DNA of 64,000 nt, taken from positions 185,798-249,797 of the IMG/VR virus record IMGVR_UViG_3300033143_001962. The stretch is one strand, 5' to 3'. Below are positions 823 to 54,851 of this stretch, piece by piece. Positions within the stretch are counted from its first letter, which is position 1, and every line of letters begins with the position of its first letter. Position numbers and translations under genes: made by a program. The notes below the pieces were generated by a model. It was not told where the DNA came from. It worked only from the letters and a program-made list of their open reading frames with translations, and made no database searches.

Positions 823-1542
823 TTATACCATTTTGTGTTTTATAATATGCTTAAGCAATACATTGTTCGCCCAAGCTGCATGTGCATCGTGTCCGTAATG
901 ATAGTTAGACGTAATGACATGATCGTATCCGTTTGTTTGCAACCAACCATCAAAGCTACCTTCTGGCAGGTATGGTTCTATGTAGCTTTCCTTAAAGTCT
1001 ACGTGCTCGTCGTTACGTATATCGTAGAACGTGTTGTTGCCGTTAAAGAATATGTGCTTGTAGCCTAAGTTAGTTAAGTACGCATCAAAGTCACAAATGT
1101 CCTGATACGCTTCTTCTGTCTTTTGATCCCAGTCAATATCTGCAATGTACTTTTTATACTGTTCGACGTACTCTGCTGGCACATCATCTATGCCGCTTGC
1201 ATTAACTTGGAAGTACGTGCCATCAATTAACCATTCTTCACGTTCCCATGTGCTCCATTGGATGACCATTAACACATCTTCAGCAGGAATAATATCTTGT
1301 GTGCGTTCTATGTACGCTTTAGTTGTTCTAATAGTACGTGCATTAGAACTAGCACTTTCAGCATCACATTGAAGCGTTGCCTTAATTGTACTAGCAAGAA
1401 CTGTGCTCCATGCAACCTTTAAGTTGTCAGGATGTGGTTGACGCTTTTGCATCCAGTACTTAGGATCATCCTCAGCGAACGAATAACTGTTTACTGCTTC
1501 CGCACCTGCTGTATGACTATCGCCGTTAGTATAAAGTATCAC
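823..1542 (-). CDS. SGNH/GDSL-hydrolase-like protein
   Basis: N-terminal NGDSHT (GDS block), ASSNAR, C-terminal HYGHDAH. Confidence 0.7.
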   Translation of the reverse strand: MILYTNGDSHTAGAEAVNSYSFAEDDPKYWMQKRQPHPDNLKVAWSTVLASTIKATLQCDAESASSNARTIRTTKAYIERTQDIIPAEDVLMVIQWSTWEREEWLIDGTYFQVNASGIDDVPAEYVEQYKKYIADIDWDQKTEEAYQDICDFDAYLTNLGYKHIFFNGNNTFYDIRNDEHVDFKESYIEPYLPEGSFDGWLQTNGYDHVITSNYHYGHDAHAAWANNVLLKHIIKHKMV

Positions 1543-1838
1543 TCACATTCACCTAATGTGCCTTTAAGCCTTTCAAGTACAAATGTTTCTTTCTTTAAGT
1601 ACTGCCTAATAGTCACAGGAGGCCCACCAAACAATGCACCTACATTATTTTCATGTGTGCCTGTGTACATTTTAGTGAATGGATAAATGTCTTCCTCTGT
1701 GATACTATCGACACGGAATTTAAAATTCCAAATGTATTCCCAGTCATTATTCGATTTTATTAAATTCAGATTCATACGTGGTAACCTCTTAACTTTATAA
1801 GTTATTATATTATCAACGGCTGCATAGCTACTGCCCAT
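1539..1838 (-). CDS. hypothetical, dispersed member of paralog family A
   Basis: YPFTKMYTGT...YLKKETFVLERLKG matches the 3332-5500 array consensus. Confidence 0.6.
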   Translation of the reverse strand: MGSSYAAVDNIITYKVKRLPRMNLNLIKSNNDWEYIWNFKFRVDSITEEDIYPFTKMYTGTHENNVGALFGGPPVTIRQYLKKETFVLERLKGTLGECE

Positions 1839-2314
1839 TATTCTTCCAGTTTTTCCAAACGTTCAATTTCTGCTAAAATGTAGTACTTAATTTTCTTAGC
1901 ATCACGCATCTTAGCACTGTGCTCTACTTCGCCATAACGGTAAACTGCACGGAAGATTTCACCCATCTGTGCATTCATATCTTTATGTGATATTAAGTGT
2001 TGTAACTCACAAGCGCATTCTGGCAATTCATAATAGCTTGCAGTACTGCCATCACTTGCTTCTTTACTTGTAGTTTCTTCTTCACTATCAAGAAGAGCAC
2101 GAGTCTTTTTTATTTCCGCTGTTACTGTCTGATAATCGTCCGCGTCTGCAGGCCCTACAGCTGGCGTGAAAACAGTATCTGCTTCAAAATTAATATTGCT
2201 TTCGTCAACTAACACCACTGGTTTTGCAGGCCCTAAATCTATCCCATTTTCTTCAGTTGCGCTTCCATCCTTCTCGTCCTGGTCTTTTAAAGGTGTTCCC
2301 ATTCCTTGTGCCAT
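1838..2314 (-). CDS. DUF3310/SaV-like phage protein with acidic N-terminal extension
   Basis: C-terminal YYELP...MGEIFRAVYRYG...DAKKIKYYILAEIERL pattern. Confidence 0.5.
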   Translation of the reverse strand: MAQGMGTPLKDQDEKDGSATEENGIDLGPAKPVVLVDESNINFEADTVFTPAVGPADADDYQTVTAEIKKTRALLDSEEETTSKEASDGSTASYYELPECACELQHLISHKDMNAQMGEIFRAVYRYGEVEHSAKMRDAKKIKYYILAEIERLEKLEE

Positions 2315-2332
2315 TATACTTCCTCCATTATG

Positions 2333-2542
2333 TTACTTGATGATATTACCGTCATCGTCGGTCGTCACTAACTCTATGTAGTCTATCTTATGCGGTGGTA
2401 TCCAGTGCCGCATATCACTTGTTGTAAATTTAAATAGTCCATTTATCCAGAATCCGTCTTTCAGATCTGCTAAATTATCAGCAAGGACAAAACCAAATGG
2501 TGTTGTGTTTTTCTCTAAGTGAGCTTTGTGATAATGTTTCAT
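2333..2542 (-). CDS. hypothetical protein
   Basis: ORF track; start moved to MKHYHK, which overlaps the upstream stop. Confidence 0.55.
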   Translation of the reverse strand: MKHYHKAHLEKNTTPFGFVLADNLADLKDGFWINGLFKFTTSDMRHWIPPHKIDYIELVTTDDDGNIIK

Positions 2543-2937
2543 TTTGTTTCCTCTTCGACACCATCGGGGCAAAATGTCTCTAAGACAGTTAATAATGATT
2601 TTGCAATATCGTACTGTCCTGCTAGTGTAGAGTAACTTATCACTTGGCGAACTTGTTCTGCAATTTCATCACGGATTGGATTATTCTCGTATGCGTATTG
2701 CACGAACAATCCAGCTCCTCTCAATGATCCCACCCACTCTGCAATGAACTCATCATTGCGTCCAGTAACATCAATATTAATTACATCACCATCATCACGA
2801 ATACGCTCAATGGCTTCTTTAGATTCTTTTAACCCGTACCCAGTTAACGCGCGGAACGATTTAATAGCCTGCACGAAATGATTAATATCGCCGCGCGATG
2901 TAATCAATAGCCTTTTAAATTGGTGTTCCATTGTCAT
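2539..2937 (-). CDS. protein with ribosomal protein bL12 (L7/L12) C-terminal-like domain
   Basis: FVQAIKSFRALTGYGLKESKEAIE resembles bL12 CTD ([21 protein letters not shown]). Confidence 0.65.
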   Translation of the reverse strand: MTMEHQFKRLLITSRGDINHFVQAIKSFRALTGYGLKESKEAIERIRDDGDVINIDVTGRNDEFIAEWVGSLRGAGLFVQYAYENNPIRDEIAEQVRQVISYSTLAGQYDIAKSLLTVLETFCPDGVEEETK

Positions 2938-3347
2938 TATCTGTACTCTCTACGGCCGCCATCTAATTTTCTGTTTTGTGGATCTGCTTGTTCTTGTTCG
3001 AATGTTTCAAGTACTACATTTCTGCATACATCAGTAAACCACTGATCAACTAAGTCAGCATCTTCTTTACCTTGGTAACCAAAACGCATTAACTTTGCAA
3101 TAAAGTAATCATTCCAGTCAAGTTCGAAATTACCATTACTTAAATCATTGTAATCAACATCCATATCAACGATAGTAACCCACGGTTCTTTACGCTTGTC
3201 GGCTTCTGCTTTTTGCTTTGCTAATGTTTCGTCACGCTTCTGCACATCTGTCTTACTTGGCTTGCGTTTTTTAACAGGCTTGTCTACGTCTTTGTTTCTT
3301 ATTACTGCCCACGTTGCACTTGCAGTTTCTCTTAATTTCTTAAACAT
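2937..3347 (-). CDS. conserved-looking phage hypothetical protein
   Basis: ORF track; start moved to MFKKLRE (3347) because the upstream part is occupied by the family A gene 3332-3553. Confidence 0.6.
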   Translation of the reverse strand: MFKKLRETASATWAVIRNKDVDKPVKKRKPSKTDVQKRDETLAKQKAEADKRKEPWVTIVDMDVDYNDLSNGNFELDWNDYFIAKLMRFGYQGKEDADLVDQWFTDVCRNVVLETFEQEQADPQNRKLDGGRREYR

Positions 3348-3553
3348 CTTTTTTCCGTACCTTTTAATTTTAGTAGTACTAATTCTTTTTCGGATATCCA
3401 CTCTTTAAATACAACTTGATACCCATCTACTTCACCTATACGCTCTCTCCAATACACTGTGGAAAGTGGCCGTATACTGTTACCTGTTACCTGACATGTG
3501 CGCGGCAATATGGTTCTTGTCTTAGTCCAATGTATATTAATACTGTAGATTAT
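3332..3553 (-). CDS. family A paralog 8 (73 aa, putative ATA start; absent from ORF track)
   Basis: Manual: IIYSINIHWTKTRTILPRTCQVTGNSIRPLSTVYWRER...KEWISEKELVLLKLKGTEKRCLRN; ATA overlaps the upstream TAA as ATAA. Confidence 0.75.
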   Translation of the reverse strand: MIYSINIHWTKTRTILPRTCQVTGNSIRPLSTVYWRERIGEVDGYQVVFKEWISEKELVLLKLKGTEKRCLRN

Positions 3554-3840
3554 ATTATACCTTTTAATTTGTTAAATGTAAACTCTTCTGGCAACATCCA
3601 GAAGTATTCTTTCATAGTTGGGTGTTTGCCACCTTCATAACCTTCATTTGTAATTCTCCTAGTTCCTTTGTACGCTTTAGTAAATGGCATTAATAATTTA
3701 CCAGTAGCCAAACACCGTGTTGGTACAATATTGCGCGTTTCTACCCACGTTGTATTGCTTAAGTATACGTCAGCGCCGTACCATGATTTAAATGTTCTAG
3801 GTAATGTCTCCACTTCCGTTACGCGACTATGCAGTCTCAT
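3550..3840 (-). CDS. family A paralog 7
   Basis: W...VPTRCLATGKLLMPFTKAYKG...WMLPEEFTFNKLKG. Confidence 0.8.
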   Translation of the reverse strand: MRLHSRVTEVETLPRTFKSWYGADVYLSNTTWVETRNIVPTRCLATGKLLMPFTKAYKGTRRITNEGYEGGKHPTMKEYFWMLPEEFTFNKLKGII

Positions 3841-4088
3841 ATATCTTCGCCCTTTATCTTTGCAAATATAAACGCTTCTTTGCTTGCGTACTTAATATCT
3901 ATACTATGCGGAATAAACGGATGCTTTTTTACACCTCTGTATATTGTGCTGCCAAACTTAGTGTACTGCTTAGTGATACAACATTTGTGTGGGAAGAATG
4001 CATACACTTCAGTCCACTCAAACGTACCCATTAACTTTTTCTGAAAGTCTGTAATTTCCTTAATTGCTTCGTCACCGATTATGATCAC
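3837..4088 (-). CDS. family A paralog 6
   Basis: W...FPHKCCIT...IYRG...YASKEAFIFAKIKG. Confidence 0.75.
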   Translation of the reverse strand: MIIIGDEAIKEITDFQKKLMGTFEWTEVYAFFPHKCCITKQYTKFGSTIYRGVKKHPFIPHSIDIKYASKEAFIFAKIKGEDI

Positions 4089-4366
4089 AGTGATCCTTTT
4101 AGTTTAAGTATCAAGTACTCTGCACTTGTTAACCACTTGTGCAATATAACAGGAGGCTCACCTGCTAAGCCGTATATCTTCCGTGTACCTTTGTATGCAT
4201 AAGTGAACATAGGAATACGCATCCTAGATAGTACACAAATATGCGGACGTATTGCTAATCGTGCCTGCCACTCGTACTTTTGTATCGGATCGTCAGAGTG
4301 TGCTTTGAGTACACGTTCTTCTTCATCTAAGAATATGTCTTGTATTGTTGGTCTTAAATCACTCAT
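4085..4366 (-). CDS. family A paralog 5
   Basis: W...RPHICVLS...IPMFTYAYKG...WLTSAEYLILKLKG. Confidence 0.8.
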   Translation of the reverse strand: MSDLRPTIQDIFLDEEERVLKAHSDDPIQKYEWQARLAIRPHICVLSRMRIPMFTYAYKGTRKIYGLAGEPPVILHKWLTSAEYLILKLKGSL

Positions 4367-4602
4367 ACATTTCCTTTAATCTTTTCAAATAAGAATTCTC
4401 GTTCAGTCATCCATTGATCTGTTTCTAATGTCATGACACCGTCATCGGTACAATTAAGTATATCTTGCTTTAAATGATAAGCTGTACTGAACATAGGAAT
4501 CTTATTGCCCGACACTACACTCTTCTTAGGCCACAATGTTTTAACCCTGCACCAACTTGGTGCTTGTGAATGGTTATTAGATGACGGTGTTGCTGGAGCC
4601 AC
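4363..4602 (-). CDS. family A paralog 4 (GTG start)
   Basis: W...WPKKSVVSGNKIPMFSTAY...WMTEREFLFEKIKG. Confidence 0.8.
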   Translation of the reverse strand: MAPATPSSNNHSQAPSWCRVKTLWPKKSVVSGNKIPMFSTAYHLKQDILNCTDDGVMTLETDQWMTEREFLFEKIKGNV

Positions 4603-4880
4603 TACACTTCACCTTGCAACTTTTTAAAGACGTACTGTTTTTCAGACATCCAGTGTACCTCTGGGATAGAGTGCGTATCATGCCCGTGAAACGAGGTTAC
4701 ATTCTTAAAGTACGCTTTAGTGAACATTGGAATATATTCATCACTCACTGAACAGCGTTTCGGCCAAAATGTTCTTCCTGGTGTCCATAGATGTGTGACA
4801 AATTGCTGTGTGTTTGTTTGGTCTGTAGTTCCGCCATCGTACTGTGTACTCATTGTATAACCCTCGTCTCTAACTGGCAT
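4602..4880 (-). CDS. family A paralog 3 (TAG stop)
   Basis: W...WPKRCSVSDEYIPMFTKAY...WMSEKQYVFKKLQG. Confidence 0.8.
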   Translation of the reverse strand: MPVRDEGYTMSTQYDGGTTDQTNTQQFVTHLWTPGRTFWPKRCSVSDEYIPMFTKAYFKNVTSFHGHDTHSIPEVHWMSEKQYVFKKLQGEV

Positions 4881-5235
4881 GTTTAATTTTCAATTTATAA
4901 AACACCATTTGTGCTTCACTAACCCATATAGTGCGTTCTCTGCCTTTGTACGCTAAAGTACCTTTAAATACTTTATTAACAAATGGCATAATAACTTTGC
5001 CAGACAATAAACACTTTCTTATTTTATAAGACGTCTCGTGTTCCCACTTAGCATTTGGTAGTACGTCTTCTACAAAAACATCAGGATCTGCTAGGTACTT
5101 GTCTACACTAGCCATAGCTAAATGTAACCGTATGTCGTTACAATCTGTGTGTAGCTTTGCACGTTGCCCACGTATTTCTTCCTGGAGTACAGCAAGTCTA
5201 TCTTTAACATTTTGTATTTCTTCTGGCCTAATCAT
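4870..5235 (-). CDS. family A paralog 2 with N-terminal coiled coil
   Basis: W...IRKCLLSGKVIMPF...FKG...WVSEAQMVFYKLK; start moved to MIRPEE overlapping the upstream stop. Confidence 0.75.
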   Translation of the reverse strand: MIRPEEIQNVKDRLAVLQEEIRGQRAKLHTDCNDIRLHLAMASVDKYLADPDVFVEDVLPNAKWEHETSYKIRKCLLSGKVIMPFVNKVFKGTLAYKGRERTIWVSEAQMVFYKLKIKHAS

Positions 5236-5500
5236 CAATTTTACCTTGTAGTCGTAATAGAACAAAACTTTTTTCACTCACCCAACGTGTCTCAGTGATG
5301 TGTACCATGCCCATGTTGCCATCTGCTTTGATACGGCCGGACACACCTTTTAAATGCGTTCCAGTCCACAACCACTGTTTAGTAACTGCGTCTATGCGCG
5401 GCAATAATATTCTTTCCTCTTGCCAATTTGCGCCCTTAAAGAATTCGTCACTTACGTTAGGATAAACTTGGCTAAGTAGTGTGTCTCTTACGTACCCCAT
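5228..5500 (-). CDS. family A paralog 1 (TAG stop)
   Basis: W...LPRIDAVT...HLKG...WVSEKSFVLLRLQG. Confidence 0.75.
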   Translation of the reverse strand: MGYVRDTLLSQVYPNVSDEFFKGANWQEERILLPRIDAVTKQWLWTGTHLKGVSGRIKADGNMGMVHITETRWVSEKSFVLLRLQGKIDD

Positions 5501-6360
5501 TCATTCTTCCATAAGTCAACTTGTAAACGTGCGCTATATCTAAAACCGTACAACATTGCTAACTTAGCCACCTCAGGAGCATTAACATCATACAATTCAG
5601 GATCACCACCACATGGCATTAAGTACACCTCACCGTGGAACCCCGCGTCTCTGTACTTTTCAACAAAGAAATTAACATCACGCATATCTGTTTGCTTGCT
5701 TACAACGAACTTTAAGTACACACTACCATACCTTTGATAGCTTGCTACAATTTCAGGTTGTAGTGCATCCTCCATTGCTTCACCAGAACTGCTAATCTTA
5801 GGACTAACACTAAATGTAAGCTGGTGAGATTCAGAATTTTTAATCTGATCTCTTAGTAAGTAATCTGCAAAGTCGTCTGTAATCTTTTGTGTGCCGTTTG
5901 TTTCAAATGTAACTTGTTTGTAGCCCATGTCACGTGCTGTACTTAGTAACTCAGGATAAGCTCGTTGCCACCCTAGTAGTGGCTCACCACCAGTTATAAC
6001 TAAGTGTGTGCTACCGTTGTTTTCTGCTACCGGGTTATTTTCTAAACGGACAACTTCCATTTGTCTAATAATCTCGTCAACTTCTAACATTGGACTTAAA
6101 TTCTTAAAACCTTTATGCCAACTTGCATAACTGTCACATCCGTACTTAGCAAGCGGCAGGCTATTATAACCCCAACCTGGATTATTTTTGTATTCTTTTG
6201 CAAACTGTTCCGGCTCTGTCGTTTCTTCGCCATCTTCTAATCCAAATGATCTACACTCAAAGTTGCAACCGAATGTTCTCACGAATACCGACGGAACGCC
6301 TGTGTATAATCCTTCGCCTTGTAAGCTGTGGAATATTTCTGCTATTTTAATTTTTGCCAT
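5488..6360 (-). CDS. queE: 7-carboxy-7-deazaguanine synthase (radical SAM)
   Basis: EIFHSLQGEG...FVRTFGCNFEC...CDS, VITGGEPLL, FETNGT, SVSPK, LQVDLW. Confidence 0.9.
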   Translation of the reverse strand: MAKIKIAEIFHSLQGEGLYTGVPSVFVRTFGCNFECRSFGLEDGEETTEPEQFAKEYKNNPGWGYNSLPLAKYGCDSYASWHKGFKNLSPMLEVDEIIRQMEVVRLENNPVAENNGSTHLVITGGEPLLGWQRAYPELLSTARDMGYKQVTFETNGTQKITDDFADYLLRDQIKNSESHQLTFSVSPKISSSGEAMEDALQPEIVASYQRYGSVYLKFVVSKQTDMRDVNFFVEKYRDAGFHGEVYLMPCGGDPELYDVNAPEVAKLAMLYGFRYSARLQVDLWKNEWGT

Positions 6361-6762: not shown

Positions 6763-6908
6763 TATAACACCTTAGGTTCGTCATACCAAATACATTCTTC
6801 GTCGTGTCCGTCGACAAAGATGTGATCGATTGCTATTGCACCGCAACATCCGCAGTGCCCGACATTGTCTGCTAACTTAGCCCACATTTGTATTTGTTCT
6901 TGGTCCAT
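6762..6908 (-). CDS. small Cys/His-rich protein (48 aa)
   Basis: Manual: MDQEQIQMWAKLADNVGHCGCCGAIAIDHIFVDGHDEECIWYDEPKVL; TAATG overlaps on both sides. Confidence 0.55.
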   Translation of the reverse strand: MDQEQIQMWAKLADNVGHCGCCGAIAIDHIFVDGHDEECIWYDEPKVL

Positions 6909-7411
6909 TACTTTGGTTTACTCATCCACCAATCTTCAAATGGGAATACAACCCAAACATCGTTTTCTGCTTTGTTAATTTCTAATCCGGTGTATCCAAC
7001 TTCATTGAAGTCACTACTTTGATTATCCACTACTGTTGCAAAGCGTACATTGTTACCGAATACATTTTGGAATTCATCGTGAATGCTTATTTGCCAATCT
7101 TCTTTAATCCAATTAAGCGTTGCACCTGAGTCGTTGATGTCATCTACAATAAGAATGTTCTTACCATTGAACGCATCTTCTGCCATCCAGCAATTACTTT
7201 CCGGGCCTTCTTTGTTTGCATTGTCACGTAAACTTACATCTAAACTGTACATAGGTACATTCATGTATTGGCTGATTAGTACTGCTGGGAGCAATCCACC
7301 GCGTGTAATGCCCACAATGTAATCTGGTTTGTAGCCGTCTAAGTTAATGTCCCGAATAATGGTTTGCACCATACGTTCCATGTCTGTGTAGTCTAAATAT
7401 AGTTTGTTCAT
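6908..7411 (-). CDS. purine phosphoribosyltransferase (Gpt/Hpt-like)
   Basis: IVGITRGGLLPA, PRPP-binding ILIVDDINDSGAT, WVVFPFE. Confidence 0.88.
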   Translation of the reverse strand: MNKLYLDYTDMERMVQTIIRDINLDGYKPDYIVGITRGGLLPAVLISQYMNVPMYSLDVSLRDNANKEGPESNCWMAEDAFNGKNILIVDDINDSGATLNWIKEDWQISIHDEFQNVFGNNVRFATVVDNQSSDFNEVGYTGLEINKAENDVWVVFPFEDWWMSKPK

Positions 7412-9458: not shown

Positions 9459-10046
9459 TTAGTATTCTACCTTGCAGTGACTCTTAGGTGTTTCCCAGAA
9501 CTCAACAGCTACAACATCAACACCAAGTCCTAGCATTTTCTTCTGAGCTAATGTAAGTAACCAAGCCGCTAAGTTTTCACTTGTTGGAATAAAGTCTACA
9601 AACACCATACCTTCGTACTTTTCGATTACTGGTACTATGTTAGGCACGTACTCTAGATTTGGCGTATAATACCCTTCAGCATGTTCTATGCACTTATCAA
9701 AGTCTAAGATCTTTTTAGGCGCTGAATGTGTACCCGATGTATGATCAAACCCAATCAGTTCAGGCACTTCGTGTGGTAATAGTGGATCGTTAATATCCAT
9801 TATGAACTTATGATCAAGTACATCATCAATGAAGTCTTTCATCCAACCTAAGTGTTTAAAATCTGTAACCATACCACGTGTTAGTTCATCACCTTCAAGC
9901 ATAACTTTAAGCTTACCTTGATGCCCATGCAAATGTCTACATGCTAAACATGTATCACCTTCCGCTGTAAATTCTGCATTTAATTCTTGCGACCAAACCC
10001 TGTGCCCGTAGCACCAGTCAAAACTTTTATCTATCGTCCACTTCAT
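9459..10046 (-). CDS. queD: 6-carboxy-5,6,7,8-tetrahydropterin synthase
   Basis: FDWCYGHRV...CRHLHGH...DFKHL...LDHKF...PTSENLA...FWETPKS. Confidence 0.92.
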   Translation of the reverse strand: MKWTIDKSFDWCYGHRVWSQELNAEFTAEGDTCLACRHLHGHQGKLKVMLEGDELTRGMVTDFKHLGWMKDFIDDVLDHKFIMDINDPLLPHEVPELIGFDHTSGTHSAPKKILDFDKCIEHAEGYYTPNLEYVPNIVPVIEKYEGMVFVDFIPTSENLAAWLLTLAQKKMLGLGVDVVAVEFWETPKSHCKVEY

Positions 10047-13423: not shown

Positions 13424-13497
13424 TGGTGCTCGGTGCGGGATTCGAACCCGCGTCTTAAGATTTAGAATCCCGCGCTAAGCCACTCAGCTAACCGAAC
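13424..13497 (-). tRNA. tRNA with CUA anticodon (amber suppressor type), CCA encoded
   Basis: GTTCGGT/ACCGAGC acceptor stem, GCTG/TAGC D-stem, loop TT-CTA-AA, T-arm GCGGG-TTCGAAT-CCCGC, 3' ACCA; anticodon stem weak (C-A mismatch, two G-U). Confidence 0.85.
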
Positions 13498-15658: not shown

Positions 15659-16339
15659 TTAACACTTGTTGTTATGGAATATAGACATAAACTCTTGTCT
15701 AGTACTAGGATCAGATTTAAATACGCCACCAAGCTTGCTTGTAATTGTGCTACTACCTACATCTTCAACACCGCGTGACTTAACACAAAAATGTTGTGCA
15801 TCCATAATAACTGCAACATCTTCTGTGTCTAATATAAATTGTAATGCGTTAAACACTTGCTCTGTTAAGCGTTCTTGTATTTGTGGACGTTTTGCAAAGT
15901 ACTCTACAATACGATTAATTTTACTCAACCCTAGTACAGTTTTCTTTGGAATGTAACCCACTGTAGCGAAGCCATCAATGACAACAAAGTGATGTTCGCA
16001 ATTTGATTGTACGTTTATGTTACGTTCAACAACCATTGCATCGTACTTCATCTTGTTTTCGACTGTTGTACACTTTGGAAATGCGGCTGGATCTAAGCCC
16101 CAAAACACTTCACCTACGTACATTTTCGCTACACGTTTAGGAGTATCAATGAGACTATCATCAGTCATGTCTAATCCTAACGTTTCCATAATATCCTTGA
16201 ACTTTGTTTCAATTATGTCAATTTTTGCTGATCTACTAAGTCCATTGTCGACCATTGGAGTTTGTACACCTTTTTCTTTAAGGTAGTCGTTTACCTCTTT
16301 ACCTAAATCTGAATCTGTTTTTACCTTGTTAAAACTCAT
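15659..16339 (-). CDS. folE: GTP cyclohydrolase I
   Basis: DTPKRVAKMY, SNCEHH, GLSKINRIV, RPQIQERLT, HFCVKSRGV. Confidence 0.95.
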   Translation of the reverse strand: MSFNKVKTDSDLGKEVNDYLKEKGVQTPMVDNGLSRSAKIDIIETKFKDIMETLGLDMTDDSLIDTPKRVAKMYVGEVFWGLDPAAFPKCTTVENKMKYDAMVVERNINVQSNCEHHFVVIDGFATVGYIPKKTVLGLSKINRIVEYFAKRPQIQERLTEQVFNALQFILDTEDVAVIMDAQHFCVKSRGVEDVGSSTITSKLGGVFKSDPSTRQEFMSIFHNNKC

Positions 16340-42169: not shown

Positions 42170-42823
42170 TTATTTATCACTAATTATCGTGTATATTTTA
42201 CTTGTTACGCCCGGGGCCATTAAATCTAGTACCACCTGCATCTTTGCATCATTAACATCAATGAAAAAATGTGTTTCTGTATGCTGCCACCAATATTTAC
42301 CAAATGCCCATCTTAGCAAAGACCCGCTCGAGCGTACATCAGCGTCATACGACGTTAAAAATTTAGCAATATTCTCACGCACATCCTTTCCACATTTAAC
42401 ATGCCTAAATGGAATGCGGTACTTGTACTCTGAGTTTTTCCTGTATATTGTTCCTGGCTCGCATGTAACACTAGCTTCTGTAATAACACCAGTTTTATCA
42501 AAAGCTAGTAACTCATGAATAGTATCTATGTTATTTGTGTACGCTATTGTTGTATTACGAGATGCAGCAAATCGCATATCTTCACTCTGCACTATGTAAT
42601 CATGTAAGTTGCATAAGTTATCAAGCAATAGTGCTAATCCCTCAGGAGCACGGTTGTGTATGTGATATTTTTCAGCCCGCGTACATATTCTCTCATGTGA
42701 CACCGGACGGTGCTTGGCCCCGCGTATAACCGAGGAGCCTGGCACACTTAATCTTACACTGTACTTGTACTTGTTAAAGAATAACTTATCAGTACTCTTA
42801 AGCTTTAGGTTTAAATTGGTCAA
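42170..42823 (-). CDS. hypothetical protein
   Basis: 217-aa ORF; KLFFNKYKYSVRL. Confidence 0.6.
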   Translation of the reverse strand: MTNLNLKLKSTDKLFFNKYKYSVRLSVPGSSVIRGAKHRPVSHERICTRAEKYHIHNRAPEGLALLLDNLCNLHDYIVQSEDMRFAASRNTTIAYTNNIDTIHELLAFDKTGVITEASVTCEPGTIYRKNSEYKYRIPFRHVKCGKDVRENIAKFLTSYDADVRSSGSLLRWAFGKYWWQHTETHFFIDVNDAKMQVVLDLMAPGVTSKIYTIISDK

Positions 42824-45104
42824 GTACTACGTACCCTTCGTCGTCTGTATGCCCTGCAGGTGTTTTCGCAGGCAACATTGGAGGTGGTAACAATTGACTA
42901 GTAGTAAACGTAATTTTATCACCTTCGTAATCTACTCTAACAGTACAATCTGTTAACCCATCGAATAAAATCTTTTTACTTAACGGAGTTTTAATAATCT
43001 CGTTAATCTTTCTGTCGATTGGTCTTGCACCTAAGCTTGAATCGTAACCAGCTTCAGCAATATGTTGTACCGCTGCTTCTGTTATGTTCAATACAATCTT
43101 CTTAGCTTTTAAACTTTCCTTAAGTACGTTAATGAACTTAACCACAATTTTCTTAATGTTAATATCTTCAAGCTTCTGGAACTTAACAATACCATCAAGT
43201 CTGTTACGTAATTCTGGCTTGAAGAATTCTTTAGTAGCTTTATCTTCTTCGCCTGTACGTTCTAGTGATTTGCCAAAGCCAATGTTGTTCTGCTCGTTAG
43301 CCGATGCACCCAAGTTTGAAGTAAGTATAATAATACAGTTAGTAAGGTTAACTTCTTTACCACCTGCACTTGTAATTTTACCTTCATCAAGTATTTGTAA
43401 TAACACTGAACTAATATCTTGGTGTGCTTTTTCAATTTCATCAAACAATACAACTGAGTAAGGATGTTTACTTACATCACTAATAAGTTTACCGCCACCT
43501 TGTGATCCATCTTCAAATCCAACGTAACCCGGAGGTGCACCGATTAATGTACTAAGCGAATGTTTCTCTTGGTACTCGGACATATCGTAACGTAACAATT
43601 TCATGTCTAAGTTCGAGCTTAATAATTTAGCAAGTTCTGTTTTACCTGTACCAGTTGGTCCTAAGAATAAGAAACTAGCTACCGGCTTAGTTGCTGAACC
43701 TAACCCACTAAAGTTAACATAGATCTTCTCGAGTACTTGCTCGACGGCTTCTTCCTGACCGTACAATTTGTCATCTATGTTACTCTTTAGTGACATTAAG
43801 TTTGCGCTTTGTTCGTTACCTAGTCTTTCAACTGGAACGCTTGCCATCTTGCTAACTTGAGCTAGTACTTTTTCTTCGTTAATGATAGCTGACTTATTAT
43901 CTATCGCACGTTCTCTTGCACATGCCGCATCAATAATGTCAATTGACTTATCCGGATTCTTTCTGTCATGAATGTAACGTGTGCTTAAATCAACTGCTGA
44001 CTTAATAGCATCTGCTGTAATAGTAACACTATGGAACTCAGACAAACGTTTAGCAACACCAGTAATAATTTTAATAGTGCTATCGTAATCTGGCTCGTCT
44101 ACTGTTAAGTTAAAGAAGCGGCGCATAAGTGCCTTATCTTTCTCAAAGGATTCGTAGTACTCGTCCCAAGTAGTGTTTGCAATAACTTTAATCTTACCAC
44201 GTGTGATAGCTGGCTTCAACATGTTTGCAAAGTCTAAACTGCCGCCTGTAGTTGCACCAGCACCTTTCATAGTATGTGCTTCATCAATAAACAGTACTGC
44301 CTTGCCACTTGCTTCAAGTGCTGTAATAATCTTTTGGAACTTCTCTTCAAAGTCACCACGGTACTTACTGCCAGCTAACATGCTGCCAATCTCTAAGCTC
44401 CATACAGTGTGATCTTTTAAGAACTCAGGTACATCGTTAGCAAGGATCTTTTGTGCAAGTCCTTCTACGATTGCAGTTTTACCTACACCTGGGTCGCCAA
44501 TCATTAGTACGTTAGACTTAAACTTCTTAGCAAGTATTTCAATGGTGCTTTTAATTTCTTCGCCGCGGCCGATAAGTGGTTCTAAGTCACCGTCTTCTGC
44601 TTGTCTGCTTAAGTTAATACAATGTTCTTCAAGTAACTCTTCAGACTGTGTTGGTGTTAATACTACATTACCATCACTGTAATGTTCATTCCAGTAATCA
44701 GCAAATGAATCCCTATCATCAATGCCGTACTTAAGTATAAAATAATTTGCGTGGCTATTTGCTTCGCCTGTGATACTTAAAAACAAATCAACTGTAGTAA
44801 CATAACGTCGGTTGCTGAACAGTACCTGTGTTACTGCTCTATTAAATACACGTTCTAATGTGTTTGTACGCTTTGGTTGTGTGTTTGGCGGAAGTGGTGT
44901 AGTAAGTAAACTATCTAAGTACTCGTCTACATCATTGATCATGTCATCAATTTCAACGCCATAGCCTTTTAAGCAATTATAAAATGGCTGATAACTTAAA
45001 AGTGCTTCTAATAAGTGTTCCACAAGTACGTACTCGTGTCCTTTCTTCTTTGCTAAGTTAATAGCATAGTCTGTAATTTGTTCAATCTCTGGATTAATTT
45101 GCAT
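42798..45104 (-). CDS. clpA: ClpA-like AAA+ unfoldase
   Basis: Clp N-domain; GDPGVGKT, GSKYRGDFEE, FIDEAH; GPTGTGKT, DMSEYQE, LFDEIEKAH, FKPELRNRLD, GARP. Confidence 0.92.
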   Translation of the reverse strand: MQINPEIEQITDYAINLAKKKGHEYVLVEHLLEALLSYQPFYNCLKGYGVEIDDMINDVDEYLDSLLTTPLPPNTQPKRTNTLERVFNRAVTQVLFSNRRYVTTVDLFLSITGEANSHANYFILKYGIDDRDSFADYWNEHYSDGNVVLTPTQSEELLEEHCINLSRQAEDGDLEPLIGRGEEIKSTIEILAKKFKSNVLMIGDPGVGKTAIVEGLAQKILANDVPEFLKDHTVWSLEIGSMLAGSKYRGDFEEKFQKIITALEASGKAVLFIDEAHTMKGAGATTGGSLDFANMLKPAITRGKIKVIANTTWDEYYESFEKDKALMRRFFNLTVDEPDYDSTIKIITGVAKRLSEFHSVTITADAIKSAVDLSTRYIHDRKNPDKSIDIIDAACARERAIDNKSAIINEEKVLAQVSKMASVPVERLGNEQSANLMSLKSNIDDKLYGQEEAVEQVLEKIYVNFSGLGSATKPVASFLFLGPTGTGKTELAKLLSSNLDMKLLRYDMSEYQEKHSLSTLIGAPPGYVGFEDGSQGGGKLISDVSKHPYSVVLFDEIEKAHQDISSVLLQILDEGKITSAGGKEVNLTNCIIILTSNLGASANEQNNIGFGKSLERTGEEDKATKEFFKPELRNRLDGIVKFQKLEDINIKKIVVKFINVLKESLKAKKIVLNITEAAVQHIAEAGYDSSLGARPIDRKINEIIKTPLSKKILFDGLTDCTVRVDYEGDKITFTTSQLLPPPMLPAKTPAGHTDDEGYVVLDQFKPKA

Positions 45105-53500: not shown

Positions 53501-53775
53501 CTTGCTGCGCTCTCTGGACTATGTTCTGCTTCTAAACTTTTAATAGTTGTTTCGTAGTGCTTCTTGTAAAAGTCATTGAGTGTATCATAATCCGCAGCTG
53601 GCTTCATGCCTGCTTTGTCTTGCGTAAAGCGTGACTTAACGATCTTCTGCAACTTGTAATCGAGTATAACGGATGCTTCCTGGAGATGTCTGTTCTTAAT
53701 TTTATCTTCAAGATGCATTGTTTCATTGTATTTGCCGTCTGGCGTTTGGTAGTACGTAATTATAAAATATCGCAT
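53497..53775 (-). CDS. hypothetical protein
   Basis: ORF track, coupled. Confidence 0.55.
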   Translation of the reverse strand: MRYFIITYYQTPDGKYNETMHLEDKIKNRHLQEASVILDYKLQKIVKSRFTQDKAGMKPAADYDTLNDFYKKHYETTIKSLEAEHSPESAAS

Positions 53776-54851
53776 AATTGTATTCCTAAATAATCCCTGT
53801 GGTTAATATTTCTTCTTTCATCTAGTTCGTGTATAAATGCTGATAATAATTCAGGCTCACCTTCTAGCATTATTTGCCTAAGTGTACTATCTACGTTCGC
53901 TTTAAACTCACTTCCGTCAACGTAGAACTTTGATTGTTTTATCTTTTCAAATTGGTTAATTGTATTCGTTTTGTATTGATGCGGTATGTTTTCAACTTGT
54001 AACTTTTTACGTGCAATAACAAATGACAACGTCCAAAAATCAATACCATCTTCAAGTTCAATTAACTCGTGCATGTTTAATACAGATACCGCATCGATTA
54101 CAGAATTAAACATCAGTGTACAATTTAATGTCTTTGCCCATTCTAGGTTAGTTGTAAACTTACTCCACTTAAGCGGGTACCTGTGGTACTCATTGACGTC
54201 ACCATAAGCATCAACACTAATGGTTAATGTCAAGTTTGTTATTCTATTAAGTACTGCTTTAATACTATCATTGACTCTGGTTAAATTCGTATTGATAACT
54301 ACTTCTGGTTGTACTTTCGAATCTGCTATTACACCTAACAATGTAATAAACTCATCAATGATTAGTGGTTCACCACCTGCAAGATAAATTTTCTTGGAGT
54401 TTAATATCTCTGTCAAATTAATATCAATCTGTCTGTGACCTACCGGAATACCTAACTCCTTCTGCCAGAGCGAACTGTTATCAGGCTTACAAGTAATACA
54501 CGCTAGATTACATTTGTTATCGTACCGTATATCATAAAAGTATTTAGGTTCGGTGTCGTACGGTTGCCAATTATTGATGTAAAACTTTACATCTGGATCT
54601 ACCATCCAGCGTTTAGTTTCGCGGAAGCGGGGGCTAATGCCACCCTTGTCTTCAATATCGTAACATGCAGTACATTGCTCAACACGTTCACCGTTTGCTA
54701 TCTTTTCCTTAAGCTGTTCTACATGGTAGCCTTCACGTACCGGAGCATGAGTTTCGCCCATGCAACATAGATACTTGTTACCATCCAGGCTAATAAACTC
54801 CTCAATGAATGGCAGCACACAAAATGTACCATTACTTAAGTCTTTACGCAT
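53760..54851 (-). CDS. radical SAM protein with N-terminal SPASM/twitch-like Cys cluster
   Basis: FCVLPF...CC, CTAC; CNLACITC; GGEPL; SVDA. Confidence 0.85.
   Translation of the reverse strand: MRKDLSNGTFCVLPFIEEFISLDGNKYLCCMGETHAPVREGYHVEQLKEKIANGERVEQCTACYDIEDKGGISPRFRETKRWMVDPDVKFYINNWQPYDTEPKYFYDIRYDNKCNLACITCKPDNSSLWQKELGIPVGHRQIDINLTEILNSKKIYLAGGEPLIIDEFITLLGVIADSKVQPEVVINTNLTRVNDSIKAVLNRITNLTLTISVDAYGDVNEYHRYPLKWSKFTTNLEWAKTLNCTLMFNSVIDAVSVLNMHELIELEDGIDFWTLSFVIARKKLQVENIPHQYKTNTINQFEKIKQSKFYVDGSEFKANVDSTLRQIMLEGEPELLSAFIHELDERRNINHRDYLGIQLCDIL

What the first reader, a model, noticed from the sequence alone, without database searches (positions are those of the whole stretch)
3332..5500. 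Eight-gene tandem array of highly diverged small paralogs (family A) next to queE
Seen: eight consecutive, translationally coupled ORFs share W-x6-7-P-x2-C-x2-[ST]-x4-P-[FL]-[ST]-x-[AV]-Y-x-G ... W-[MIV]-[ST]-E-x2-[FY]-x3-[KR]-[LI]-[KQ]-G at the C-terminus, with unrelated variable N-termini. A ninth copy lies at 1539-1838. I see no obvious DNA-level repeats, so the expansion is old and maintained as diverged protein. I recognise no named family. Inference: a diversified array of host-interacting or anti-defence proteins (constant scaffold, variable specificity), or subunits of a hetero-oligomer that dock through the terminal KLKG helix.
Basis: partly seen in the sequence, partly recalled or inferred. 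Interest (0 to 1): 0.72.

Follow-up and report, generated by a model that had tools for sequence, protein, structure and literature searches.

The report
Phage array of zinc-less finger proteins
Eight back-to-back genes (plus a ninth nearby) in an uncultivated giant phage encode diverged copies of a small unnamed protein whose predicted fold looks like a PARP-type DNA-break-sensing zinc finger that has lost its zinc site; the array is real, old and shared by related phages, but its job is still only inferred.

Summary
Nine minus-strand ORFs (3332-5500 and 1539-1838) are true paralogs: in a search of all 558 window ORFs they hit only each other, and a profile finds exactly nine copies in the 250 kb virus record. 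Two gene models need correcting. A7 starts at ATG 5235. A1 has no canonical start codon for its first strand.

The family has no Pfam, PHROG, NCBIfam or PDB sequence match. It is rare: 242 representatives among 1.84 billion proteins, all 66-147 aa.

In related giant phages the family lies directly after queE in every queE-linked locus seen, as 1, 3 or 8-10 copies. The 8-10-copy arrays form one clade on the QueE tree. Their copies fall into cross-genome orthogroups, so the expansion is old and maintained. Array copies diverge about twice as fast as the flanking genes, while single-copy members are under purifying selection.

Two independent AlphaFold models give a basic beta-sheet-plus-helix core. 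Its best structural matches are PARP-1 and DNA ligase III zinc fingers, at weak Z of about 5. Three of the four zinc ligands are replaced.

My best reading is a diversified set of zinc-less, PARP-like nucleic-acid-binding modules. That function is inferred. Anti-defence, hetero-oligomer and QueE-partner roles remain open.

The parts
5228..5500 (-). A8, first array copy (90 aa). Its ATG lies 13 nt inside the end of queE. The family Cys is replaced by Asp.
   Evidence: Ortholog L089_1 at 47% identity.
4870..5277 (-). A7, the copy with a long helical N-terminal extension. The real start is probably ATG 5235 (121 aa), overlapping the A8 stop in ATGATTAG.
   Evidence: P0008 aligns 1:1 from Met at 5235. 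Ortholog L089_2 at 50% identity.
4602..4880 (-). A6 (92 aa)
   Evidence: Lies in the starred A5/A6/A1 super-group.
4363..4602 (-). A5 (79 aa). It is the closest paralog of A6 (E 2.6e-10 to 4e-10).
4085..4366 (-). A4 (93 aa), the copy that was modelled. Core residues 30-93 have pLDDT above 90.
   Evidence: Orthogroup with L089_5, L001_3, L002_6/7, L085_2 and L087_2/4.
3837..4088 (-). A3 (83 aa)
   Evidence: Orthogroup with L002_8 and L001_6, support 97/90.
3550..3840 (-). A2 (96 aa). Its orthologs stand first in the arrays of L002, L085 and L087, but it is seventh here.
3332..3571 (-). A1. The called ORF is 3332-3508 (TTG, 58 aa) and lacks strand 1. The open frame up to 3571 still encodes the W-x7-P-x2-C part but has no canonical start. 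It is either a decaying copy or one started at a rare codon.
   Evidence: Full-length orthologs L087_7 and L085_8.
1539..1838 (-). A9, the dispersed ninth copy (99 aa), just upstream of the DUF6071 gene. The Cys is replaced by Asp. It groups weakly with the single copy of L010.
   Evidence: support 82/82
5488..6360 (-). queE-like radical SAM gene (290 aa), the conserved upstream anchor of the array
   Evidence: phrog_2076 at E 3e-53; Pfam Radical_SAM, weak; 69 related loci
2937..3401 (-). Conserved downstream anchor: homolog of a 'virion structural protein' family. It follows queE directly in phages that lack the family.
   Evidence: phrog_13349 at E 2.4e-13; synteny
3554..3582 (-). Promoter-like site TTTACA-17-TATAAT (11 of 12 matches) lying over the A2 end and the lost A1 start
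   Evidence: This is a consensus match only; 16 sites were found against 20.6 expected in shuffles.

Best explanation
Family A is a phage-only family of small proteins. Each has a basic core of about 63 residues: strand, Cys-bearing hairpin, two strands, then a C-terminal helix ending in K-L-K-G. In front of the core sits a variable, often acidic or coiled-coil N-terminal tail.

Shown:
- The gene sits as one copy directly after queE in several lineages of T4-related giant phages.
- It was expanded once, by tandem duplication, in the ancestor of the clade that holds this phage.
- It has since been kept at 8-10 copies as distinct orthogroups, with occasional duplication, loss and reshuffling.
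- The copies are co-translated with queE through overlapping stop and start codons.

Inferred:
- The core is a PARP-type finger that has lost its zinc. Ligand 1 (Cys) is kept, while ligands 2-4 have become Ser/Thr, Ser/Thr and Glu/Ala. The Trp two residues before ligand 3 and the basic residues before ligand 1 are kept; in PARP-1 these contact DNA.
- The proteins are therefore most likely sequence-independent binders of nucleic-acid ends, nicks or structures.
- The paralogs differ in the loop equivalent to the PARP base-stacking loop and in the N-terminal tail, which gives each copy a different target or partner.
For: - Paralogy and copy count.
- Purifying selection on single-copy members: dN/dS 0.04-0.29 in four of five pairs, 0.57 in a near-identical pair, with amino-acid divergence equal to QueE's at short range.
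- Arrays of 8, 10, 9, 8, at least 5, and 3 copies in L001, L002, L085, L087, L089 and L095, always in the order queE - array - virion-protein gene.
- The six large arrays form one starred clade on the QueE tree, with single-copy L010 as sister.
- Cross-genome orthogroups.
- Array orthologs are 40-50% identical where QueE is 75-77%, and 30-48% where QueE is 68-76%.
- Two independent AF2 models (pLDDT 84 and 82) share one topology.
- PARP-1 Zn1/Zn2 and ligase III fingers are the recurring best matches: VIA Z 5.3 and 5.1 over 58-59 residues, six of the top eight for model 2. They also appear in Foldseek PDB, AFDB, BFVD and the ESM Atlas.
- Column counts: Cys 128/144, Ser/Thr 139/144, Trp 133/144, Arg/Lys/His before the Cys.
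- The spacing between the ligand-2 and ligand-3 positions is 32, inside the 26-37 range of PARP-like fingers. Ligands C21/C24/H53/C56 and the DNA-contacting Trp157 and Arg122 are taken from PMC3094755; R18 and F44 from PMC8150716.
- The core has a mean net charge of +4.7 and is positive in 90% of 144 members.
Against: - Structural scores are weak: Z about 5 and Foldseek E 0.1-1. The tool itself warns that Z under 8 may reflect only a common arrangement.
- RING and C1 domains (both models) and, for the single-copy model, COMM domains score nearly as well. That model also matches PC4 and Pur-alpha folds at Z 4.1-4.4.
- No sequence profile links the family to PF00645.
- The residue-level mapping of the zinc ligands rests on motif spacing and aligned ranges, not on a superposition I could inspect.
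- Some window copies are nearly neutral (A5, A6, A9).
- No binding experiment or DNA-complex model was possible.
Confidence: 0.4

Rival explanations
1. The copies are protein-binding inhibitors or adaptors, that is, anti-defence or host-takeover proteins. A constant scaffold presents a variable loop and tail, and each paralog is aimed at a different host protein.
For: - The array sits in a variable slot between conserved genes.
- Array copies evolve about twice as fast as the flanks.
- Copy number (1, 3, 8-10) and order vary among relatives.
- Treble-clef relatives such as RING and C1 domains are protein or ligand binders and score as well as PARP fingers.
- The family is absent from four cultured jumbo phages, the nearest GenBank matches by DNA polymerase (40-44% identity).
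Against: - Orthogroups are retained across QueE divergence of 65-77% identity to the window and copy number is stable at 8-10. That looks more like a maintained set than rapid turnover.
- Single-copy members evolve as slowly as QueE.
- The family matches no named family in the libraries searched; PADLOC was not run, and no anti-defence library was at hand.
Confidence: 0.25
2. The copies are subunits of one hetero-oligomer, in the way that PC4 or PUR-type strand-strand-strand-strand-helix repeats pair up to form a nucleic-acid-binding domain. The array is kept because each paralog fills one place in the complex.
For: - Copy number is stable and orthogroups are retained.
- Tight translational coupling favours equal dosage.
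- Most arrays hold one copy with a coiled-coil-like N-terminal extension; the main such orthogroup is in four arrays, and the window and L089 carry a separately grouped long-extension copy (A7 type).
- One metagenomic protein (P0061, 147 aa) carries two family domains in one chain.
- Pur-alpha and PC4 folds match the single-copy model at Z 4.1-4.4.
Against: - The family works as a single gene in other giant phages, so a multi-paralog complex is not required.
- Arrays differ in which orthogroups they hold, and in their order.
- P0061 is a single sequence on a 2.3 kb contig and may be a frame error.
- No complex prediction among paralogs could be run.
Confidence: 0.15
3. The family is an accessory or regulatory partner of QueE or of 7-deazaguanine synthesis.
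For: - It is the first gene after queE in every one of 23 queE-linked loci, including eight loci where 3.5-5.7 kb of other genes separate it from the next backbone gene.
- Its start often overlaps the queE stop codon.
- folE and queD lie nearby.
Against: - In related phages without the family, the next gene uses the same overlapping start, so adjacency may be inherited position only.
- The family also occurs with no queE within 5 kb (L090/L091 and L093).
- Many phages in the same half of the QueE tree lack it.
- Eight to ten different partners for one enzyme is hard to explain.
- The QueE-dimer plus single-copy complex prediction scored 0.11 against a mark of 0.32, which the tool says is no evidence either way.
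Confidence: 0.1
4. The ORFs are non-functional remnants or chance reading frames.
For: A1 has lost its canonical start. Several copies have lost the conserved Cys.
Against: - Frames are open and coupled, and orthologs persist in six or more phages.
- dN/dS is well below 1 in single-copy members.
- Models are confident.
Confidence: 0.02

Closest known systems
PARP-type zinc finger (Pfam PF00645: PARP-1 F1/F2, DNA ligase III-alpha finger)
   Same: - The order of elements is the same: strand 1, long loop with a Cys hairpin, strand 2, variable loop, strand 3, then a helix whose first turn carries the second ligand pair.
- The Cys is at ligand 1.
- The spacing between the ligand 2 and ligand 3 positions is 32 (29 in the single-copy form), within the 26-37 range.
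- A Trp sits two residues before ligand 3, and basic residues sit just before ligand 1.
- The surface is basic.
- PARP-type fingers are the best, or co-best, structural match for two independent models.
   Different: - Ligands 2, 3 and 4 are Ser/Thr, Ser/Thr and Glu/Ala, so no zinc site can form.
- There is no profile-level sequence similarity.
- The protein stands alone at about 80 aa and ends right after helix 1, with no second helix.
- It is found only in phages and occurs in tandem arrays.
- The structural scores are weak.
Other treble-clef domains (C1 domains, RING fingers such as ZNRF1)
   Same: Hairpin-sheet-helix core of similar size, with VIA Z 4.4-5.6.
   Different: These bind two zinc ions through Cys/His sets that are absent here. 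Their alignments are shorter (47-56 residues) and their partners are lipids or E2 enzymes.
PC4 / Pur-alpha / Whirly-type strand-strand-strand-strand-helix single-stranded nucleic-acid binders
   Same: Four strands followed by a helix, a basic character, and function as paired repeats. Z 4.1-4.4 for the single-copy model.
   Different: They are not among the top 50 matches of the array-copy model. No sequence similarity was found, and the dimer-forming features were not examined.
Lineage-specific tandem paralog families of large phages and giant viruses (general phenomenon; my own knowledge)
   Same: Small accessory genes are multiplied in place, diverge fast, vary in copy number among relatives, and lie between conserved core genes.
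   Different: Here the set is old and numerically stable (8-10). It descends from a conserved single-copy gene and keeps recognisable orthogroups.

Membership tests
zf-PARP (PF00645) | CCHC zinc ligand set | tested here: not met
   Counts over 144 members are: ligand 1 Cys 128; ligand 2 position Ser 80 / Thr 59; ligand 3 position Ser 63 / Thr 45; ligand 4 position Glu 61 / Ala 24 / Gln 14. There is no conserved His. The ligand identities of PARP-1 come from PMC3094755.
zf-PARP (PF00645) | [quoted passage not shown] | tested here: met
   32 residues separate positions 47 and 80 in the 4085-4366 copy, and 29 in the L024 single copy. The range is from PMC3094755.
zf-PARP (PF00645) | Fold: three-stranded sheet, ligand hairpin in loop 1, helix carrying ligands 3 and 4 on its first turn | tested here: inconclusive
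   The topology matches in both models, and PARP-1 or ligase III fingers are the best or near-best hits. However, Z is 4.5-5.3 and Foldseek E is 0.1-2, below the level the tool calls reliable.
zf-PARP (PF00645) | Significant match to the family profile | tested here: not met
   None of 144 members matches PF00645, even at E up to 10. The family profile does not hit PARP chains in the PDB sequence set.
zf-PARP (PF00645) | Binding to DNA breaks through the loop-1 Arg and the sheet Trp | not testable with these tools
   The equivalent residues are conserved (Arg/Lys/His 128/144 at position 42, Arg/Lys 93/144 at position 43, Trp 133/144) and the core is basic. No binding assay or DNA-complex model was available.
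QueE accessory protein (hypothetical class) | Constant genomic linkage to queE | tested here: not met
   The family is linked to queE in 23 loci. It stands with no queE within 5 kb in L090/L091 and L093, and is absent after queE in many relatives.
QueE accessory protein (hypothetical class) | Physical complex with QueE | tested here: inconclusive
   Complex prediction scored 0.11 against a mark of 0.32. The controls were not run, and the tool states this is no evidence either way.
PC4 / PUR repeat | Four-strand-plus-helix repeat with a significant structural or sequence match | tested here: inconclusive
   Z is 4.1-4.4 for one model only. These folds are absent from the top 50 of the other model, and there is no Pfam hit.

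The most novel reading that the evidence does not exclude
A previously undescribed, phage-restricted class of zinc-free PARP-like fingers. After one ancient amplification, they act together as a set of 8-10 specialised nucleic-acid-end or structure sensors or maskers, possibly pairing as hetero-oligomers, in a clade of uncultivated 345 kb phages. They could, for example, shield replication or packaging intermediates, or decoy host nucleases.
Probability: 0.2. Interest if true: 0.7.

Novelty: new variant of a known kind. Interest (0 to 1): 0.45.

Why it matters
The work gives an unnamed protein family (no Pfam, PHROG or NCBIfam model) a testable structural identity. It would be a finger fold best known from eukaryotic DNA-damage sensing, here kept without its metal.

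It also offers a clean natural series for studying how a small phage gene is amplified and then partitioned into stable paralog types. Copy number runs from absent to 1, 3 and 8-10 at one conserved genomic slot.

If nucleic-acid binding is confirmed, the array would be a new kind of phage toolkit for handling DNA ends or structures. If it is not, the array is still a well-defined candidate set for anti-defence screens.

Tried and rejected
- Megablast of 9 kb and tblastn of one copy against GenBank phages found nothing.
- Profile searches of four cultured jumbo phages (Atu_ph07, Vibrio 2.275.O, XaC1, Ecwhy_1), the nearest GenBank matches by DNA polymerase, found no copies.
A subfamily alignment recovered only the L001 and L002 contigs from IMG/VR and JGI metagenomes.
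- Several representative proteins sit on contigs under 2 kb and gave little context.
- No sequencing run was listed for the region, so expression could not be checked.
- The QueE-partner complex prediction gave no answer.
- I could not run a profile-profile comparison with PF00645.
- Two literature searches found no description of the family.
- dN/dS for array orthologs was not attempted because synonymous sites are saturated at these distances (dS already 1.9-3.2).
Full report
**1. What is in the window**

The window is the last 64 kb of a 249,797 bp IMG/VR virus record that CheckV rates 72% complete. GC content is 0.39 and almost every gene is on the minus strand. Its T4-type DNA polymerase is only 40-44% identical to those of Agrobacterium phage Atu_ph07, Vibrio phage 2.275.O, Xanthomonas phage XaC1 and the Asteriusvirus group. 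It is therefore an uncultivated, distant member of the giant T4-related myoviruses.

In transcription order after queE (5488-6360) they are:
- A8, 5228-5500
- A7, 4870-5277
- A6, 4602-4880
- A5, 4363-4602
- A4, 4085-4366
- A3, 3837-4088
- A2, 3550-3840
- A1, 3332-3508
- A9, 1539-1838, lying 1.5 kb further on

**2. Is the similarity more than chance?**

Yes. Each copy was searched with phmmer against all 558 stop-to-stop ORFs of the window. Each hit only other family members, with E-values from 4e-3 down to 2.6e-10, and no unrelated ORF appeared. A profile of the nine finds nine places in the whole record and nothing else.

Mean pairwise identity within the window is 31%. At the DNA level only 14-33 nt patches over the motif codons repeat.

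**3. Anatomy and corrections**

queE->A8 and the six junctions from A8->A7 to A3->A2 overlap by 13, 8, 11, 1, 4, 4 and 4 nt.

A7 does not start at GTG 5277. Its ortholog P0008 aligns from its own residue 1 to the Met at 5235 at 58% identity, and that ATG overlaps the A8 stop codon (ATGATTAG).

In five junctions, the AAGG of the Lys-Gly codons in the conserved C-terminal K-L-K-G lies 4-10 nt before the next start. The end of each copy therefore doubles as the ribosome-binding site of the next.

A2->A1 is different. There is a 41 nt gap and a near-consensus TTTACA-17-TATAAT site at 3582-3554 (a pattern match only). A1's only canonical start (TTG 3508) removes the first strand. The in-frame upstream stretch still encodes W-x7-P-x2-C but holds no ATG, GTG or TTG. 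A1's orthologs in two other phages are full length. A1 is thus either decaying or started at a rare codon.

**4. How large and how known is the family?**

An exhaustive profile search of 1.84 billion representative proteins gave 242 hits at E<=1e-3 and 21 at E<=1e-10. All are 66-147 aa. Where a source gives a name, it is 'hypothetical protein'.

Neither the nine copies nor 144 aligned members match any Pfam, PHROG or NCBIfam model or any PDB sequence at meaningful E-values. Four cultured jumbo phages, the nearest GenBank matches by DNA polymerase, have no copy.

**5. Genomic context elsewhere**

Sixty-nine IMG/VR loci encode a QueE relative. Scanning them with the family profile showed the following:
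- 8 copies in L001 (QueE 76% identical)
- 10 copies in L002 (68%; a complete 344,483 bp genome with terminal repeats, all ten copies in the array)
- one copy in ten further loci (QueE 52-56%)

In every case the family gene is the first gene after queE.

A search seeded with a single-copy family member found four more loci, again with queE (48-49%) directly upstream. Look-ups of individual representatives added arrays of 9 (L085), 8 (L087), at least 5 (L089, cut by the contig end) and 3 (L095). All lie between queE and the same downstream gene. Short contigs L074-L076 also carry 2-3 adjacent copies.

The conserved backbone is phosphoribosyltransferase - queE - [slot] - a 'virion structural protein' homolog (phrog_13349; window 2937-3401) - an L7/L12-like protein - DUF6071. 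In relatives without the family, the virion-protein gene follows queE directly and uses the same overlapping start.

The linkage is not universal. In L090/L091 (contigs of 200 and 88 kb) and L093 (185 kb), a single family gene has no queE within 5 kb.

The single-copy contigs G002 and G003 are rated only 25% and 20% complete at 86 and 70 kb. Those phages are probably giant too.

**6. History of the array**

On a QueE tree the six loci with large arrays form one starred clade (99). Single-copy L010 is their sister (94). Twelve single-copy loci form another starred clade, and clades without the family lie between them. All family-bearing loci fall in one half of the tree.

On trees of the copies themselves, the single-copy forms make one starred clade. 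The array copies do not cluster by genome but form cross-genome groups. Examples:
- A4 with L089_5, L001_3, L002_6/7, L085_2 and L087_2/4
- A3 with L002_8 and L001_6 (97/90)
- A8 with L089_1 (99/94)
- A7 with L089_2 (100/100)
- A1 with L087_7 and L085_8 (98/92)
- A2 with L085_1, L002_1 and L087_1
- a coiled-coil group of L001_4, L002_3, L085_3 and L087_3 (100/98)

The amplification therefore predates the split of these phages. There have been a few later duplications (L002_6/7), losses and changes of order; the A2 type is first in three arrays but seventh here. The trees rest on about 80 columns, and many deeper forks are unresolved.

**7. Selection**

For single-copy members, Nei-Gojobori dN/dS is 0.04-0.29 in four of five pairs. 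It is 0.57 in a near-identical pair with very few changes. Amino-acid identity tracks that of QueE at short range: 81 vs 84%, 91 vs 92% and 96 vs 95%.

Array copies diverge much faster than their flanks. Against the closest relative L089 (QueE 75-77%), orthologs are 40-50% identical. Against L001 and L002 (QueE 76 and 68%, QueD 80 and 73%, PRT 63%), best matches are 30-48%. Synonymous sites are saturated at these distances, so I did not try to separate relaxed from positive selection.

**8. Fold**

AlphaFold2 with a 144-row alignment models A4 at mean pLDDT 84, with residues 30-93 mostly above 90. The elements are strand 32-38, short hairpin 42-44, strands 55-64 and 73-79, and helix 81-90. A separate model of the L024 single-copy protein, built with a different alignment, has the same order of elements at pLDDT 82.

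Fold searches gave these results:
- With the exhaustive aligner, the best matches to A4 are a RING domain (Z 5.6), PARP-1 finger 1 (5.3; 58-59 residues at 2.6-3.7 A), PARP-1 finger 2 (5.2), C1 domains (about 5) and the ligase III finger (4.7).
- For the second model, PARP-1 finger 1 is first (Z 5.1, model 14-73 on chain 5-64), and six of the top eight are PARP or ligase III fingers.
- Foldseek against PDB, AFDB clusters, Swiss-Prot models, BFVD and the ESM Atlas repeatedly returns PARP-type fingers and DNA ligase 3 among the few named hits. DUF3331 and Rv1322 proteins also appear.

All these scores are weak. The tool notes that Z under 8 can be a common arrangement only. COMM, Pur-alpha and PC4 folds reach Z 4.1-4.5 for the second model.

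**9. Comparison with the PARP finger, residue by residue (pattern level)**

The facts about PARP-1 come from two papers:
- PARP-1 finger 1 binds zinc through Cys21, Cys24, His53 and Cys56.
- Ligands 2 and 3 are 26-37 residues apart.
- The second ligand pair sits on the first turn of helix 1.
- A Trp two residues before the His (Trp157 in finger 2) and a loop-1 Arg (Arg18/Arg122) contact DNA (PMC3094755; PMC8150716).

In family A the corresponding columns, counted over 144 members, read as follows:

| PARP-1 feature | Family A column | Count (of 144) |
|---|---|---|
| Ligand 1 | Cys | 128 |
| Ligand 2 | Ser/Thr | 139 |
| Ligand 3 | Ser/Thr | 108 |
| Ligand 4 | Glu, Ala or Gln | 99 (61 / 24 / 14) |
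| Spacing, ligand 2 to 3 | 32 residues (29 in the single copy) | - |
| Trp two before ligand 3 | Trp | 133 |
| Basic residues before ligand 1 | Arg/His/Lys, then Arg/Lys | 128, then 93 |

The region equivalent to the PARP base-stacking loop is the most variable part of the core, in both length and sequence. The core carries a mean net charge of +4.7 and is positive in 90% of members. The N-terminal tail averages -1.0.

I could not inspect a superposition. This mapping rests on motif spacing and on the aligned ranges printed by the aligner, so it is an inference.

**10. What it most likely does**

The shown facts are:
- a real, selected, phage-only protein
- co-translated with queE
- amplified once and then kept as a stable set

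The step to function is inference. A basic, PARP-like finger that keeps the DNA-contact positions but not the metal most plausibly binds nucleic-acid ends, nicks or structures without sequence preference. The variable loop and tail would set each paralog's target or partner.

The rival readings are protein-targeting anti-defence proteins, hetero-oligomer subunits and a QueE partner. None is excluded, and the evidence for and against each is listed in the rival entries. The one complex prediction I could run (QueE dimer plus its own single-copy neighbour) scored 0.11 against a mark of 0.32. The tool says this must not be counted either way.

**11. queE context**

The window also encodes QueD (9459-10046) and FolE (15659-16339). 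Neither QueC nor a TGT/DpdA-type transglycosylase was found in the incomplete record. The complete relative has a weak QueC-like gene and no TGT match. Whether these phages modify DNA with 7-deazaguanines is therefore open, and I draw no link from that to family A.

**12. Verdict**

Its functional guesses are untested.

The family is new as a sequence family. Structurally it is a zinc-less variant of a known finger, and as a phenomenon it is an instance of paralog amplification in large phages. Interest is moderate: it makes a clear, well-bounded system with a testable structural hypothesis, but no function has been demonstrated.

Noticed in passing
window 13424-13497 (-): A tRNA with anticodon CTA (amber-suppressor type; ARAGORN labels it Pyl). 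TAG ends only 6 of 66 long minus-strand ORFs, but A8, A7 and A6 all stop at TAG.
   Followed up: partly
window 3554-3582 (-): A near-consensus sigma-70-like site (TTTACA-17-TATAAT, 11/12) lies exactly where A1 has lost its start codon. It may drive the downstream virion-protein gene. A weak hairpin lies at 3585-3604.
   Followed up: partly
window junctions at about 5235, 4602, 4366, 4088 and 3840: The codons of the conserved C-terminal K-L-K-G (AAA..AAAGG) serve as the Shine-Dalgarno of the next copy in five junctions. A duplicated unit therefore carries its own translational coupling.
   Followed up: partly
window 5488-5500 and the queE ends of L001, L002, L010, L012-L017, L085, L087: The gene after queE, whatever it is, starts at an ATG buried in the last queE codons (its product begins Met-Gly in L001, L002, L010, L085 and L087). 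The coupling site is conserved while the downstream gene changes.
   Followed up: partly
window 2539-2937 (-); also L085 5652-6062: A phage protein with a weak match to the ribosomal L7/L12 C-terminal domain (PF00542, E 8e-4 here; listed for the L085 homolog too), conserved in the backbone next to the array.
   Followed up: no
window 9459-10046, 15659-16339 and 6908-7411 (-): QueD, FolE and a phosphoribosyltransferase accompany queE. No QueC or TGT/DpdA was found in the 72%-complete record. The complete relative G001 has only a weak QueC-like gene and no TGT match.
   Followed up: partly
P0061 (147 aa, Logan contig of 2,295 bp): One metagenomic protein holds two family-A domains in a single chain. 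It is either a natural fusion of neighbouring copies or a frame error.
   Followed up: no
L081/G002 (85.7 kb) and L022/G003 (70.3 kb): Contigs carrying the single-copy form are rated 25% and 20% complete. The single-copy phages are probably also about 350 kb, not ordinary T4-sized phages.
   Followed up: partly
window 42798-45104 and 53760-54851 (-): A Lon-like ATP-dependent protease (phrog_4871, E 1e-226) and a second radical SAM protein (phrog_14086) are encoded in the same window.
   Followed up: no
window 1838-2314 (-): The acidic 158 aa protein between A9 and the L12-like gene has a weak match to a PHROG annotated as kinase (phrog_4897, E 4e-6). It is conserved in L002, L085, L087 and L095.
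   Followed up: no
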